This document shows positions 24,986 through 34,957 of a DNA stretch of 64,000 nt, one piece after another. Numbering within the stretch: position 1 is the stretch's first letter; each line of letters starts with the position of its first letter. Below the pieces are notes generated by a model. That model made no database searches. It was not told where the DNA came from and was given only the letters and a program-made list of their open reading frames with translations. The stretch lies in sequence record OQ992561.1, one strand, 5' to 3'. A program made the translations under genes and the position numbers.

Positions 24986-25051
24986 ATGAAGAAAAAATTG
25001 ATTATGATTACAATTGTAGTTATAGCTTATAAACTATGGGAGTGGAAATAA
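24986..25051 (+). CDS. 21-aa hydrophobic peptide
   Basis: MKKKLIMITIVVIAYKLWEWK. TAATG overlap with the next gene. Confidence 0.5.
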   Translation: MKKKLIMITIVVIAYKLWEWK

Positions 25052-32569: not shown

Positions 32570-34486
32570 ATGTCTAATGAACAACAGGTTACAAATAAGA
32601 AAAAGATTAAGGGCATTGAAGCCAAACATATTACTTATTGTACTGATCAATTTGGTAAGTTTACAGATGCACATTTCGTTAAAGAACGAATTCATTTTGA
32701 AGATGGTACAACTGCAAATAATTTAAGGATGTGGGAAAACTACCAGCGTCCTTTTTGGATTACCGCAAAAGGAATGCGTAACCATAAAGAAAAGAAAGAT
32801 TACGAATATGAGCGTAACTTAGTTAAATACATGTCAACTCAAATTGACATGAAACGTAAGATTAGTAAAATCCTAGGTGACTATTCGGCTAGATCTCTTC
32901 GTCAACTAGCGCGTAGTCCTTACCTATATGGCAGTGATGTTAGTTCAACCTGTTATCTGAAGCATGATTATCAAGAACGTTATCCTGGTCTAATCTCTCT
33001 AAACACTGTTGCTGGCGGTGACATCGAAACCAACGTTTATGAAGCTGAGAACGATGGCCAGATTATCTGTATGTCAGTTACACATAAGAACAAAGCTTTC
33101 CTAGCCTATTTAAAACGATGGGTTAGTGATATTGAAGATCCAGTGAAAGAGACATTAGAACAAGCACAAAAAGAAGAGGTATTATCACATCTAATTAAAG
33201 AACGTGGTCTAGATATTGAAGTAATGGTTGTTGAAACACCAGTAGATATTATTATTGAATGTTTTAAACGACTACATACCTGGAAACCAGATTTCTTCGC
33301 ATTCTGGAATATTAGCTTCGACATTGGTAGAATCTTAAAAACATTAGAACACTATGGTGTTAATCCAGCTGATGTTTTTTCTGATCCATCGGTACCTAAG
33401 AATTATAGGTATTTCCATTTTAAGATTGATGAACCTATGACCACCACTGCATCTGGGGTCACTAAATCTAAAGGACCGGAGGATCAATGGCATTGGATTA
33501 CAGCACCCTCTAGTTTTCAATGTATCGATTCTATGTCAACTTATCGAGTAACTCGATTAGCTAAAGGACGTGATCCTAACTATCGGTTAGAGTCTATTCT
33601 TAGAAAAGAACTAAACATCGATAAATCCACGACCATTAAAAATGATAAGGACTTAGAAGATTTTATTGAAGGTTTTAATAAACAACTAGTTGACCGACCA
33701 GGCGGCGTTATTACTAAATATATTAAAAATGTAGGTAGTAATGAATGGGTACCGGTGGATGATTTTATATTAAATGATAACTTTACCTATGGTGATTCTA
33801 TTAGATATGTAATGGAATTTGGTAAGTTAACCTTTAAAGAAACTGCACATCTTGGTGGTATCGATTGGCACCGTGAGATGCAGACTAAGCATAAAATCAA
33901 ATATGGTCTTTATAACATCATCGACTCCATTCGACTAGAACAACTTGATGAACAAGTAAATGACCTTGGTCGCTCTATAAGTCTATTCTCTAAGGCATCT
34001 GACTATAAGAACTTTAGTTCTAACCCAAAACGACTATGTGACGATATGCACTTCTGGTATTTGAATAGACCAGAGCCATGTGTCATTGGTTCAAGTTCAG
34101 ATCAGATGGTGCATGAACTTGATCAATATGTTATTGGCCATAATGATTGGATTGTTACACTACCATCATACATGGCAGGTCCAAATGGATTGCAGTGTGT
34201 TAAAGATTTACCGAATTATAAAACCTTAATCTTCTGTCATATCGCCGACCTTGACATCGTGTCGACATATCCTAACGTTAGTCAGATTCTAAATATTGCA
34301 CGTGAAACATGTGTGATGGAATTCTCAATGATGGAAGGAATTAGTGAACACCATCGCCGTGAAGTTGGCGTAAACTTAACAGGTGGTAGGGTTAATGCTA
34401 TTGAAATCACACAGAAGATCATGGGTGCTCCTAAAATGGACACCCTGCTAGAGAAGTTTATTAATACCTATAAGAACCCAAAGTAA
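32570..34486 (+). CDS. Split family-B DNA polymerase, 3'-5' exonuclease and motif A fragment (gp82)
   Basis: ExoI DIET, ExoII WNISFD, ExoIII YNIIDS, motif A DLDIVSTYP. Motifs B and C are absent. Confidence 0.85.
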   Translation: MSNEQQVTNKKKIKGIEAKHITYCTDQFGKFTDAHFVKERIHFEDGTTANNLRMWENYQRPFWITAKGMRNHKEKKDYEYERNLVKYMSTQIDMKRKISKILGDYSARSLRQLARSPYLYGSDVSSTCYLKHDYQERYPGLISLNTVAGGDIETNVYEAENDGQIICMSVTHKNKAFLAYLKRWVSDIEDPVKETLEQAQKEEVLSHLIKERGLDIEVMVVETPVDIIIECFKRLHTWKPDFFAFWNISFDIGRILKTLEHYGVNPADVFSDPSVPKNYRYFHFKIDEPMTTTASGVTKSKGPEDQWHWITAPSSFQCIDSMSTYRVTRLAKGRDPNYRLESILRKELNIDKSTTIKNDKDLEDFIEGFNKQLVDRPGGVITKYIKNVGSNEWVPVDDFILNDNFTYGDSIRYVMEFGKLTFKETAHLGGIDWHREMQTKHKIKYGLYNIIDSIRLEQLDEQVNDLGRSISLFSKASDYKNFSSNPKRLCDDMHFWYLNRPEPCVIGSSSDQMVHELDQYVIGHNDWIVTLPSYMAGPNGLQCVKDLPNYKTLIFCHIADLDIVSTYPNVSQILNIARETCVMEFSMMEGISEHHRREVGVNLTGGRVNAIEITQKIMGAPKMDTLLEKFINTYKNPK

Positions 34487-34854
34487 TATATCAGTGGAAG
34501 CGCCGAGGAGGATATGAATGTTCATCTGTTGGTGACAAAAGATTCTCGGCTCTTTACGCAAGGCTTCCTGATGGCAGAACAATTGAGGAAGCTTGGCAGT
34601 TAGATTGTAAAGGATATCGCATATACTCCAACCATTGGAAAGCTGGTAAAGGAAAACCACCACTAGACGGGTATAATCCCAAATATGATGATTATAAAAA
34701 TCTGTGGAAAGTATGGGCGGTATCTAATAAACATCTAATGGATGAATTGCGTCAGAATGCAAAAGAACATGATAACTATCTTTCTGATGTTTTTGCTTCT
34801 ACTGATATTTCACAGGCACGTGCTCTAGCAGAACTACTTAATGAAGGATATTAA
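34486..34854 (+). CDS. Unannotated 122-aa NADAR-like protein starting at ATA (or start-loss pseudogene)
   Basis: Open frame (I/M)YQWKRRGGYECSSVGDKRFSALYARLPDGRTIEEAWQLDCKGY...LSDVFASTDISQARALAELLNEGY. ATA overlaps the polymerase TAA. Confidence 0.6.
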   Translation: MYQWKRRGGYECSSVGDKRFSALYARLPDGRTIEEAWQLDCKGYRIYSNHWKAGKGKPPLDGYNPKYDDYKNLWKVWAVSNKHLMDELRQNAKEHDNYLSDVFASTDISQARALAELLNEGY

Positions 34855-34927
34855 AAAATGGAAGGTATTCCTAATTAAATATTATCAATTGATCATTACT
34901 GCTAACATAAACTTCGACACATCATAA

Positions 34928-34950
34928 AACCCTCCCATTACGGGAGGGTT
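34928..34950. terminator. Bidirectional terminator
   Basis: aaaccctccc attac gggagggttt. Confidence 0.7.
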
Positions 34951-34957
34951 TATTTCG

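What the first reader, a model, noticed from the sequence alone, without database searches (positions are those of the whole stretch)
34486..34854. Hidden NADAR-like gene behind the DNA polymerase, starting at ATA
The 370-nt gap after the polymerase is one open frame of 122 codons with phage-like codon use. Its only plausible start is ATA overlapping the polymerase stop (TAATA, where TAATG coupling is seen at 25051, 45708 and 57655). The sequence DKRFSALYA...TIEEAWQLDCKG...LWKVWA..N..LMDELR...LSDVF...QARALAELL follows the NADAR/YbiA order (FSNFY...EHYYQA.K...N.LG.LL) as I recall it. Established: NADAR enzymes (DarG1-type) remove ADP-ribose from guanine in DNA. Inference: this is either an AUA-initiated, low-expression anti-DarT1 gene or a recent start-loss pseudogene.
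Basis: partly seen in the sequence, partly recalled or inferred. Interest (0 to 1): 0.65.

Follow-up and report, generated by a model that had tools for sequence, protein, structure and literature searches.

The report
Frameshifted NADAR-like tail on phage polymerase
The "gap" behind the phiKZ-type DNA polymerase gene encodes a real, conserved NADAR-fold domain with no usable start codon. It is most likely made as an extra tail on some polymerase molecules when the ribosome slips back one base just before the stop codon, which current annotations and the phiKZ polymerase papers I read do not mention.

Summary
Window 34486-34854 is an open 122-codon frame with no ATG, GTG or TTG before codon 85, and ATA overlaps the polymerase stop (TAATA).

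It is a real gene. Against phiKZ there are 9 synonymous changes to 1 non-synonymous. Against PhiPA3, dN/dS is 0.03. The family exceeds 500 proteins (phrog_9995, no Pfam).

The NADAR idea holds at the fold level only. The model has pLDDT 96.9. Its three best PDB matches are the three NADAR structures (Z 8.8, 7.1, 6.9; the next is 3.5). Pfam NADAR and a profile comparison with YbiA find nothing.

ATA is probably not the start.
- In all 14 related jumbo-phage lineages where the domain lies in the polymerase's -1 frame, a slippery heptamer sits in the polymerase frame exactly where the domain's frame opens.
- The heptamers are C_CCA_AAG, G_GGA_AAG or A_AAA_AAG, the three most shift-prone in E. coli.
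- 11 of the 14 lineages have no canonical start. The "start" codon there is ATA, GTA, ACA, ACT, GTT or absent.
- One phiKZ-like metagenomic phage encodes polymerase and domain as a single uninterrupted ORF.

Best reading: a -1 frameshift makes a gp82 (DNAP-N)-NADAR-like fusion. A role in removing ADP-ribose from DNA is inferred, not shown. A pseudogene is rejected.

The parts
32570..34486 (+). Zero-frame ORF of DNA polymerase subunit DNAP-N (phiKZ gp82 homologue, 638 aa), ending in TAA at 34484-86
   Evidence: ORF list. phrog_3011 DNA polymerase, E 1e-241. 98-100% identical to PHIKZ082. gp82 is DNAP-N of the split B-family polymerase (bioRxiv 10.64898/2026.09.30.755723).
34477..34483 (+). Slippery heptamer C_CCA_AAG in the polymerase frame (codons CCA AAG preceded by C), directly followed by the zero-frame stop
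   Evidence: Sequence. It is the only in-frame V_VVA_AAG among 18,724 codons of the window, against 6.5 expected from codon shuffles. It is conserved or replaced by G_GGA_AAG or A_AAA_AAG in all 14 lineages with the domain in the -1 frame. These are the three most efficient -1 motifs in E. coli (PMC4066793).
34483..34854 (+). -1 frame extension: GTA (Val), ATA (Ile), then the 121 further codons of the NADAR-like domain, stop TAA 34852-54. Predicted fusion is about 761 aa.
   Evidence: Translation. Family alignment A1. AlphaFold model pLDDT 96.9. Fold hits to NADAR. dN/dS 0.03.
34486..34488 (+). More likely an ordinary Ile codon of the extension.
   Evidence: The homologous codon is ATG, GTG, GTA, ACA, ACT or GTT in relatives. 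There is no SD upstream.
34514..34603 (+). 29-codon ORF in another frame, annotated as 'hypothetical protein' in several GenBank records. Probably spurious.
   Evidence: Annotations of ANB1 and KEN19. Its ATG follows GGAGGA, which is simply the Gly-Gly codons of the conserved domain.
34738..34854 (+). PHIKZ082.1-type annotation: the last 38 codons of the domain, from the first in-frame ATG. It is a truncated call of the real domain.
   Evidence: phiKZ record. phrog_33573 is just this fragment.
34927..34951 (+). Intrinsic-terminator-like hairpin with a T tract that closes the polymerase-domain transcription unit, lying between convergent genes
   Evidence: Terminator scan. Contigs from RNA libraries run through the polymerase-domain junction and end at 34916-34953.

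Best explanation
Window 34486-34851 encodes a compact (about 120 aa) NADAR-fold domain, called X here. It has no start codon of its own in phiKZ-type phages.

Proposed mechanism: ribosomes translating the DNA polymerase subunit DNAP-N (gp82) reach C_CCA_AAG at 34477-83, with the TAA stop next in the A site. A fraction slip back one base, with tRNA-Pro moving CCA to CCC and tRNA-Lys moving AAG to AAA. They then read GTA ATA TAT ... to 34854 and make a gp82-X fusion of about 761 aa. The rest terminate and give the 638-aa gp82.

What is shown:
- the heptamer, its phase, and the open, conserved -1 frame;
- co-variation of the heptamer with frame arrangement across lineages;
- a natural uninterrupted DNAP-N-X fusion;
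- the NADAR-like fold.

What is inferred:
- that slipping actually occurs, and how often;
- that X is an N-glycosidase removing ADP-ribose (DarT1-type or similar base adducts) from DNA;
- that tethering it to the polymerase carries it into the phage nucleus and to the replication fork.

My odds: -1 frameshift fusion 0.8; true NADAR-superfamily fold 0.8; DNA de-ADP-ribosylation as the function about 0.45.
For: 1. Comparative anatomy (loci).
- In all 14 distinct lineages where X lies in the polymerase's -1 frame, a V_VVA_AAG heptamer lies in the polymerase frame inside the short stretch where the X frame is already open.
- C_CCA_AAG occurs in phiKZ, PhiPA3, 201phi2-1, PS119XW/HHBS36_1, Phabio, L012 and L014. 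G_GGA_AAG occurs in L015. A_AAA_AAG occurs in Noxifer, L019, L020, L022, L037 and L055.
- By chance 0.13 heptamers are expected over the 375 eligible codon positions; 14 are observed.
- L015 changed C_CC to G_GG, three coordinated bases, and stays slippery.
- The wobble base of the preceding codon (Asn, Pro, Ser, Ala, Val or Leu) always fits the heptamer, although synonymous sites are otherwise saturated.

2. Eleven of the 14 lineages have no ATG, GTG or TTG near the domain's N-terminus. Yet the first 24 codons show pN 0.04-0.28 against pS 0.64-0.9.

3. Contrast groups.
- Roughly 45 of 65 loci where X is not behind this polymerase have a canonical start, nearly always ATG, within a few codons of the N-terminus. 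Most of the rest are embedded in long ORFs.
- The one lineage with X in the +1 frame (Psa21, RVTF4) has TTG or GTG at that codon and no heptamer.

4. Rosetta-stone fusions.
- P0354 (698 aa) is a gp82 homologue (30% identity, E 1e-36) with X at residues 558-678 (49% identity to the window's X, E 1e-34). It is one uninterrupted ORF on a contig that also carries a phiKZ-type capsid gene.
- P0249 is a divergent B-family polymerase with X at its C-terminus.
- X is also fused to A-family polymerases, SF1/PIF1 helicases and RNase H.

5. Controls in the window. The other four in-frame X_XXA_AAG sites open -1 frames of only 2, 2, 2 and 13 codons; this one opens 123.

6. The three heptamers are the three most efficient in E. 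coli, reaching 54% with a stimulator (PMC4066793).

7. Fold and context.
- pLDDT 96.9; the three NADAR structures rank 1-3; Foldseek's top hit is 8bat.
- X is fused to DUF4326 and SLOG domains, the partners reported for viral NADAR domains (PMC9503650 and PMC7824862).

8. Contigs from RNA libraries span the junction with no insertion or deletion.
Against: - No protein, ribosome-profiling or reporter data exist. I found no phiKZ ribosome-profiling study.
- No conserved stimulatory RNA structure was found. Individual folds 9-10 nt downstream are only modestly better than shuffles (phiKZ z -2.6, Phabio z -5.3, several near 0). Without a stimulator these heptamers shift at only about 0.3% in E. 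coli, so the fusion may be rare.
- PhiPA3 (ATG), 201phi2-1 (GTG) and PS119XW (GTG at -3) could also start X independently. Psa21 and RVTF4 must do so, which shows that X can work unfused.
- The C-terminal Pro-Lys of the polymerase could in principle be conserved for its own sake.
- NADAR kinship rests on fold (Z 8.8 is moderate) and motif order. Pfam NADAR and hhalign against a YbiA-type profile are negative. X also lacks the Gly-rich loop of YbiA.
- No link to DarT was tested.
Confidence: 0.7

Rival explanations
1. AUA-initiated or reinitiated standalone gene. Ribosomes that terminate at TAA restart at the overlapping ATA and make a free 122-aa protein at a low level.
For: - TAATA mimics the TAATG coupling junctions found elsewhere in the window.
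- PhiPA3 has TAATG at the homologous place.
- Standalone homologues begin at exactly this position (phrog_9995 profile 2-123 aligns from residue 6 of P0001).
- The Psa21 lineage shows that the protein can be made on its own.
Against: - Relatives carry GTA, ACA, ACT or GTT at this codon, or no candidate at all, while the N-terminus stays under purifying selection.
- No SD precedes ATA.
- AUA is a very poor initiator (general knowledge).
- This reading does not explain why a top-three slippery heptamer is kept in phase in all 14 -1-frame lineages.
- It could still coexist with frameshifting in phiKZ.
Confidence: 0.13
2. The frameshift fusion is real, but X is not a DNA ADP-ribose hydrolase. It may be a NADAR-shaped module with another substrate (soluble ADP-ribose derivatives, another base adduct) or a non-catalytic DNA- or protein-binding accessory of replication enzymes.
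For: - Sequence methods do not link X to NADAR.
- X lacks the Gly-rich pyrophosphate loop of YbiA (my comparison of consensus A1 with A2).
- Aravind and co-workers argue that many phage NADARs target soluble ADPr derivatives (PMC9503650).
- The VIA-align note says Z around 8 can reflect a common arrangement.
Against: - Invariant E34, Q38, K42 and D101 sit in the order of the NADAR catalytic Glu, Lys and Asp/Glu.
- Repeated fusion to polymerases, helicases and RNase H points to a DNA-borne substrate.
- All solved NADARs tested hydrolyse ADPr-guanine (PMC11543638).
Confidence: 0.25
3. Recent start-loss pseudogene, or only the 38-aa PHIKZ082.1 fragment from ATG 34738 is expressed.
For: No canonical start before codon 85. 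GenBank records annotate only fragments.
Against: - 9 synonymous to 1 non-synonymous differences between the window and phiKZ; dN/dS 0.03 against PhiPA3.
- The frame is intact across lineages whose synonymous sites are saturated.
- A 38-aa fragment would lack every invariant N-terminal residue of a domain that folds as one unit.
Confidence: 0.02

Closest known systems
E. coli dnaX tau/gamma (-1 frameshift at A_AAA_AAG in a replicase subunit gene)
   Same: A V_VVA_AAG heptamer inside a DNA-replication gene yields two products from one mRNA. The A_AAA_AAG lineages here (Noxifer, L019 and others) use the identical heptamer (PMC5009743).
   Different: In dnaX the shift truncates the protein (gamma) and is driven by an upstream SD and a downstream hairpin. 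Here the shift extends the protein with a whole enzyme-like domain, the zero-frame stop follows the heptamer directly in the phiKZ group, and no conserved stimulator was found.
Phage lambda G/GT tail-assembly chaperone (-1 frameshift at G_GGA_AAG)
   Same: A C-terminal extension made on a minority of molecules by a slip near the end of the upstream ORF. L015 uses the same heptamer.
   Different: A different protein class (morphogenesis rather than replication). The downstream part here is an autonomous domain that occurs as a free protein in hundreds of other phages.
T4 AdfN (gp30.3), a phage NADAR that removes DarT1-made ADP-ribose from DNA
   Same: A small phage-encoded NADAR-fold protein. 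Its catalytic Glu and Lys lie on one helix (E36/K43 in AdfN; E34/K42 invariant in X) (PMC11825919).
   Different: AdfN is described in its paper as a NADAR family protein and is a free protein. X is missed by Pfam NADAR, is shorter, and is tethered to the polymerase. Activity of X is untested.
DarG1 / BC4488-type NADAR antitoxins (G. lovleyi 8bat, E. coli C7)
   Same: Best structural match (Z 8.8, 113 of 122 residues). If my motif alignment is right, X has Asp (D101) where DarG1-type NADARs have the catalytic Asp (D171), not the Glu of YbiA or the His of other phage NADARs (PMC11543638).
   Different: No DarT partner. X lacks the N-terminal DNA-binding extension of DarG1 (target 219 aa against 122). 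Residue equivalence was not verified by superposition.
AdfM, the nuclear macrodomain anti-DarTG2 factor of chimalliviruses
   Same: A chimallivirus enzyme that reverses DNA ADP-ribosylation and must act inside the phage nucleus (PMC13309987).
   Different: Macro fold, free protein, thymine adducts. In that paper NADAR appears only in the introduction (as DarG1 and T4 AdfN), and 'frameshift' does not occur in it.

Membership tests
NADAR superfamily (Pfam PF08719 / YbiA-like) | Significant sequence match to the family model | tested here: not met
   hmmscan of Pfam at E<=10 gives no NADAR hit. PF08719 finds nothing in the nearest whole phage record. hhalign of A1 against a YbiA-type alignment gives probability 0.1%. 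NCBIfam gives nothing.
NADAR superfamily (Pfam PF08719 / YbiA-like) | NADAR fold: alpha-helical core flanked by two small beta sheets | tested here: met
   Model pLDDT 96.9. VIA-align against 48,161 chains ranks 8bat Z 8.8 (113 aa, 2.9 A), 2b3w Z 7.1 and 8bau Z 6.9 as 1-3, with the next at Z 3.5. Foldseek's top hit is 8bat, probability 0.77. Viral NADAR proteins appear among weak BFVD hits.
NADAR superfamily (Pfam PF08719 / YbiA-like) | Catalytic Glu and Lys on the core helix (E88/K95 in E. coli C7, E43/K50 in P. nicotianae, E36/K43 in T4 AdfN) | tested here: inconclusive
   E34, Q38 and K42 are invariant in 111 sequences and follow the F-S-x-hydrophobic motif in the same order as F29-S30-N31-F32 ... 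E48 ... Q52 ... K55 of YbiA. The Glu-Lys spacing is 8 rather than 7. No residue-level superposition was available.
NADAR superfamily (Pfam PF08719 / YbiA-like) | Second acidic catalytic residue after the late beta strand (D171 in DarG1 type, E125 in YbiA type, His in some phage NADARs) | tested here: inconclusive
   D101 is invariant in the L-S-D motif directly after strand 98-100. Equivalence is inferred from order only (PMC11543638).
NADAR superfamily (Pfam PF08719 / YbiA-like) | N-glycosidase / ADP-ribosyl-guanine hydrolase activity | not testable with these tools
   Needs biochemistry.
Programmed -1 ribosomal frameshift (X_XXY_YYZ type) | Slippery heptamer in the zero-frame phase | tested here: met
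   C_CCA_AAG at 34477-83 in the polymerase frame. It is the only in-frame V_VVA_AAG in 18,724 codons.
Programmed -1 ribosomal frameshift (X_XXY_YYZ type) | Long, conserved, protein-coding -1 frame that opens at the site and lacks its own start | tested here: met
   123 codons are open after the slip, against a median of 4. dN/dS 0.03. No canonical start in 11 of 14 lineages.
Programmed -1 ribosomal frameshift (X_XXY_YYZ type) | Conservation or co-variation of the shift site across relatives beyond what the amino acids require | tested here: met
   14 of 14 -1-frame lineages keep a V_VVA_AAG heptamer, and 0 of 4 lineages with X in the +1 or 0 frame do. C_CC changes to G_GG in L015. 0.13 are expected and 14 observed.
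Programmed -1 ribosomal frameshift (X_XXY_YYZ type) | Stimulatory element (downstream structure, upstream SD, or adjacent stop) | tested here: inconclusive
   The zero-frame stop is adjacent in the C_CCA_AAG and G_GGA_AAG groups (3 nt further on in 201phi2-1). No structure is conserved across lineages; z-scores range from -5.3 to +0.75.
Programmed -1 ribosomal frameshift (X_XXY_YYZ type) | Trans-frame protein product observed | not testable with these tools
   Only contigs from RNA libraries were available. No phiKZ ribosome profiling was found.
Translationally coupled gene with a non-canonical (AUA) start | Start codon or near-cognate conserved at the junction, with a ribosome-binding site | tested here: not met
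   The codon is ATA, ATG, GTG, GTA, ACA, ACT, GTT or absent in relatives. No SD lies within 15 nt upstream.

The most novel reading that the evidence does not exclude
A sub-population of the replicative polymerase of phiKZ-type nucleus-forming phages carries a built-in DNA de-ADP-ribosylase, appended to DNAP-N by a programmed -1 frameshift. The fusion takes the enzyme through the selective nuclear import route and places it at the fork, where it erases DarT1-type base adducts that would stall replication. This would be a polymerase-tethered counter-defence, reinvented elsewhere as direct fusions to A- and B-family polymerases, helicases and RNase H.
Probability: 0.35. Interest if true: 0.88.

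Novelty: new variant of a known kind. Interest (0 to 1): 0.8.

Why it matters
phiKZ is the model nucleus-forming jumbo phage, and its polymerase was reconstituted and solved by cryo-EM in 2026 as gp82 plus gp50 (with the accessory protein Rhc, gp155). Neither of the two 2026 polymerase preprints I read contains the words 'frameshift' or 'NADAR'.

If the fusion exists:
- the native polymerase has a fourth, enzyme-like module that recombinant work has left out;
- annotations of about 50 Phikzvirus genomes carry two meaningless fragments in place of one domain;
- a family of more than 500 "hypothetical" phage proteins (phrog_9995), plus its many fusions to replication enzymes, gains a testable function.

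It would also add a counterpart for guanine adducts to the recently described nuclear macrodomain AdfM. It would be a clear bacterial-virus example of frameshifting used to attach an accessory enzyme to a replicase. The prediction can be tested with one tagged construct or one targeted mass-spectrometry run.

Tried and rejected
1. Sequence kinship to NADAR. Pfam, NCBIfam and hhalign against a YbiA-type profile were all negative. A profile search of PDB sequences gave only chance-level uL3 hits.

2. ESM Atlas. It was busy for the window's sequence, and 201phi2-1 gp143 gave no usable named cluster.

3. A conserved frameshift-stimulating RNA.
- A GGAGGA/UCCUCC hairpin is shared by PhiPA3, HHBS36_1, L012 and L014. 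It starts 17 nt or more after the stop, derives from Gly-Gly and Ser-Ser codons, and is absent in phiKZ.
- The A_AAA_AAG loci show no consistent structure.

4. The idea that X is the "other protein" proposed to partner the little-finger (LF) insertion of gp82.
- The named LF-bearing Pseudomonas phages in my hit lists do have X.
- But 5 of 16 polymerase-X lineages (L015, L022, L037, L067, L084) lack the LF segment. The link is therefore not obligatory.

5. Amber-suppressor explanation for the in-frame TAG between polymerase and X in L067, L068 and L084. No tRNA was found in those partial contigs, which are 37-51% complete, so it is unresolved. I read L084 with TAG=Q only as a device to obtain a long query. 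That is not a claim about its genetic code.

There is no result.

7. Transcriptional slippage. C_CCA_AAG has no homopolymer run, and RNA contigs show no insertion or deletion at the junction. Contigs cannot exclude rare variants.

8. The SD-like GGAGGA plus ATG at 34514 and 34518. These give only 29-aa and 5-aa ORFs in other frames and were rejected as real starts.

9. The X protein tree is too short to resolve how many times the polymerase linkage arose.
Full report
WHAT IS THERE

The window is a Phikzvirus genome segment. The 801 nt around the finding are 100% identical to PA7, SL2, ANB1 and more than 30 other isolates, and 99.9% identical to KTN4. The window's coordinates coincide with those of the ANB1 record.

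The ORF 32570-34486 (638 aa) is the homologue of phiKZ gp82. Two 2026 preprints show that gp82 is DNAP-N, the exonuclease and part-palm subunit of a split B-family polymerase completed by gp50 and the accessory protein Rhc.

- ATA lies at 34486-88 and overlaps the stop.
- 122 codons run to TAA at 34852-54.
- The first in-frame ATG is codon 85.
- GenBank records annotate only two scraps here: 34514-34603 in another frame, and 34738-34854, which is PHIKZ082.1.
- An intrinsic-terminator-like hairpin at 34927-51 closes the unit.
- Contigs from RNA libraries of four studies run through the junction without any insertion or deletion and end at 34916-34953.

IT IS A REAL GENE

- tblastn finds the frame in 102 phage records: PhiPA3 88%, 201phi2-1 68%, PS119XW 67%, Phabio, Psa21, Noxifer, N4-like Achromobacter phages, Delftia phage RG-2014 and Sphingomonas phage PAU.
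- A protein search finds more than 500 clusters of about 120-130 aa with no Pfam domain. PHROGs files the family as phrog_9995, function unknown.
- Window against phiKZ: 9 synonymous and 1 non-synonymous differences. Window against PhiPA3: dN/dS 0.03. At greater distance synonymous sites are saturated while dN is 0.26-0.41.
- The first 24 codons alone give pS 0.64-0.9 against pN 0.04-0.28, including in lineages that lack any start codon.
- A pseudogene is therefore excluded.

WHAT THE DOMAIN IS

An AlphaFold model built on 111 family members has pLDDT 96.9.
- An exhaustive structural comparison with 48,161 PDB representatives ranks the three NADAR structures first, second and third: G. lovleyi DarG1-type NADAR 8bat (Z 8.8, 113 of 122 residues, 2.9 A), E. 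coli YbiA 2b3w (Z 7.1) and P. nicotianae NADAR 8bau (Z 6.9). The next hit is Z 3.5.
- Foldseek also puts 8bat first (probability 0.77).
- By sequence nothing links it to NADAR. Pfam PF08719 gives no hit and hhalign against a YbiA-type profile gives 0.1%.

The invariant residues follow the NADAR order: F20-S21-A22, then E34..Q38..K42 on the first long helix, then D101 after the late strand, then the Q110-A-R-A-L helix. The corresponding NADAR features are FSNF, the E..Q..K helix, the catalytic Asp/Glu, and the final N-x-L-G helix. This mapping is by order and spacing, not by superposition.

Domain architectures agree with the NADAR reading. The domain is fused to DUF4326 and to SLOG (YAcAr, cpYpsA) domains. 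These are the partners that Aravind and colleagues report for viral NADAR domains.

I rate true NADAR-superfamily kinship at about 0.8. Membership by the Pfam definition fails.

HOW IT IS EXPRESSED

The last seven bases of the polymerase frame, 34477-83, are C_CCA_AAG, a canonical -1 slippery heptamer. The frame it leads into is the X frame, which opens at 34474.

I extracted every locus in which a gp82-type polymerase precedes X, from GenBank phages and IMG/VR contigs, and analysed the junctions by script.

In all 14 distinct lineages with X in the -1 frame, a heptamer of the V_VVA_AAG class lies in the polymerase phase inside the stretch where the X frame is already open:
- C_CCA_AAG in phiKZ, PhiPA3, 201phi2-1, PS119XW/HHBS36_1, Phabio, L012 and L014;
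- G_GGA_AAG in L015;
- A_AAA_AAG in Noxifer, L019, L020, L022, L037 and L055.

These are the three heptamers that Sharma et al. found most efficient in E. coli (PMC4066793).

The codon homologous to ATA is ATG in PhiPA3, GTG in 201phi2-1, GTA in Phabio, ACA in L012, ACT in L014 and GTT in L015. The A_AAA_AAG group has no candidate at all. It behaves as an ordinary, weakly constrained sense codon.

Eleven of the 14 lineages have no canonical start near the N-terminus.

The heptamer is kept at synonymous positions.
- Pro is always CCA and Lys always AAG.
- The wobble base of the preceding Asn, Pro, Ser, Ala or Val codon is always C.
- In L015 all three X positions changed together to G.

Statistics:
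- From the window's codon usage, an in-frame V_VVA_AAG is expected 3.5e-4 times per codon.
- Over the 375 eligible positions of the 14 lineages, 0.13 are expected and 14 are seen.
- Even if these are only three independent origins, chance is remote.
- Within the window the motif is avoided elsewhere: 1 observed against 6.5 expected.
- The four other in-frame X_XXA_AAG (all T_TTA_AAG) sites open -1 frames of 2, 2, 2 and 13 codons, against 123 here.

Contrast groups behave as the model predicts.
- Where X is not behind this polymerase, roughly 45 of 65 loci have a canonical start, nearly always ATG, at the N-terminus. Most of the others are embedded in very long ORFs.
- In the one lineage with X in the +1 frame (Psa21, RVTF4), the homologous codon is TTG or GTG and the heptamer is gone.
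- In two lineages (L067/L068 and L084) X follows the polymerase in the same frame after a single TAG. Whether that is readthrough, suppression or reinitiation is unresolved.
- One phiKZ-like metagenomic phage, whose contig carries a PhiKZ_MCP capsid gene, encodes a gp82 homologue and X as one uninterrupted 698-aa ORF. This is P0354, found on two contigs.
- A different divergent B-family polymerase carries X at its C-terminus (P0249).
- X is also fused to A-family polymerases, SF1/PIF1 helicases, RNase H and DprA-like domains, and it sits inside giant proteins of 2,000-6,000 aa.

The polymerase-X polypeptide is therefore a recurrent, selected arrangement.

WHAT IS NOT SHOWN

- No trans-frame protein has been observed.
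- I found no conserved stimulatory structure. Bare V_VVA_AAG motifs shift at only about 0.3% in E. coli.
- The adjacent stop may help (a stop close to the shift site matters in one plant-virus case reviewed in PMC5009743). Even so, the fusion may be a minor species.
- ATA reinitiation could coexist in phiKZ.
- The Psa21 lineage proves that X can function unfused.
- The function is inferred from three things: fold, invariant residues, and the company the domain keeps. Known facts that make it plausible are that NADARs remove ADP-ribose from guanine in DNA (PMC11543638), that T4 AdfN does so as an anti-DarT1 factor (PMC11825919), and that chimalliviruses already deploy a nuclear macrodomain against DarTG2 (PMC13309987).
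- The idea that fusion serves nuclear import and fork targeting is my inference.

LITERATURE

Full-text searches for phiKZ with frameshift, gp82/PHIKZ082, NADAR or ribosome profiling found no description of this extension. Neither of the two 2026 polymerase preprints contains 'frameshift' or 'NADAR', and one describes DNAP-N as 638 residues. Only the held library was searched.

I did not test it, and it is not evidence here.

VERDICT

- The NADAR-like reading is supported at fold level.
- ATA-start is probably wrong, and the pseudogene reading is wrong.
- The best explanation is a programmed -1 frameshift that appends a NADAR-fold domain to the polymerase subunit DNAP-N.
- This is a new variant of known kinds (frameshift extension; phage NADAR counter-defence).
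- Interest is 0.8.

Noticed in passing
L004:920-1225 (PhiPA3, NC_028999.1); also L067 about 2305-2673: The PhiPA3 DNAP-N gene is interrupted by a group I intron (Rfam RF00028, 71.7 bits, E 5e-17), between polymerase residues 562 and 563, right after the motif-A catalytic Asp codon. The GenBank 'DNA polymerase' CDS therefore stops at 932. L067 and L068 have a gap of about 370 nt at a similar place, but Rfam did not match there.
   Followed up: partly
L084:2980-2982; L067 and L068:2995-2997: In two metagenomic lineages the NADAR-like domain follows the polymerase in the same frame after a single TAG (TAG CTG / TAG CTA), with no start codon. This points to readthrough, suppression or reinitiation. 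No tRNA was found in these partial contigs.
   Followed up: partly
proteins P0265, P0289, P0291, P0292, P0358 and others; loci L030, L040, L044, L047, L048, L052, L066, L073: The same domain sits inside giant proteins of 2,000-6,000 aa that have almost no Pfam matches (occasionally cpYpsA SLOG or DUF7831 nearby). They may be polyvalent anti-defence proteins of phages or plasmids.
   Followed up: partly
window 4131, 24409, 51880, 53612 (+ strand): Four in-frame T_TTA_AAG heptamers lie in other long ORFs. Their -1 frames close after 13, 2, 2 and 2 codons, so they would only truncate. V_VVA_AAG heptamers are otherwise absent in frame (1 observed against 6.5 expected), which suggests avoidance.
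   Followed up: partly
gp82 residues 350-415 (window about 33617-33814) against loci L015, L022, L037, L067, L084: The 'little finger' insertion of DNAP-N, reported as restricted to Pseudomonas chimalliviruses, is missing from 5 of 16 polymerase lineages that still carry the downstream domain. The two features are not strictly linked.
   Followed up: yes
window 34853: The strain behind the RNA-library contigs (phiKZ-like, 43 substitutions in 1.1 kb) has one A fewer in the A-run that begins in the stop codon of the domain. The stop itself is kept.
   Followed up: no
window 34506-34520: A perfect SD-like GGAGGA followed by ATG at 34514 and 34518 misleads gene callers into a 29-codon ORF in the wrong frame. 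The purine run is simply the conserved Gly-Gly codons of the domain.
   Followed up: yes
Achromobacter phages phiAxp-3, Axy04, Axy12, Axy24 (records about 1.2-2.2 kb from the left end): In these 73-75 kb Achromobacter phages the free-standing homologue lies within the first 2.2 kb of the genome record. If that is the early region, it would fit an anti-defence role.
   Followed up: no
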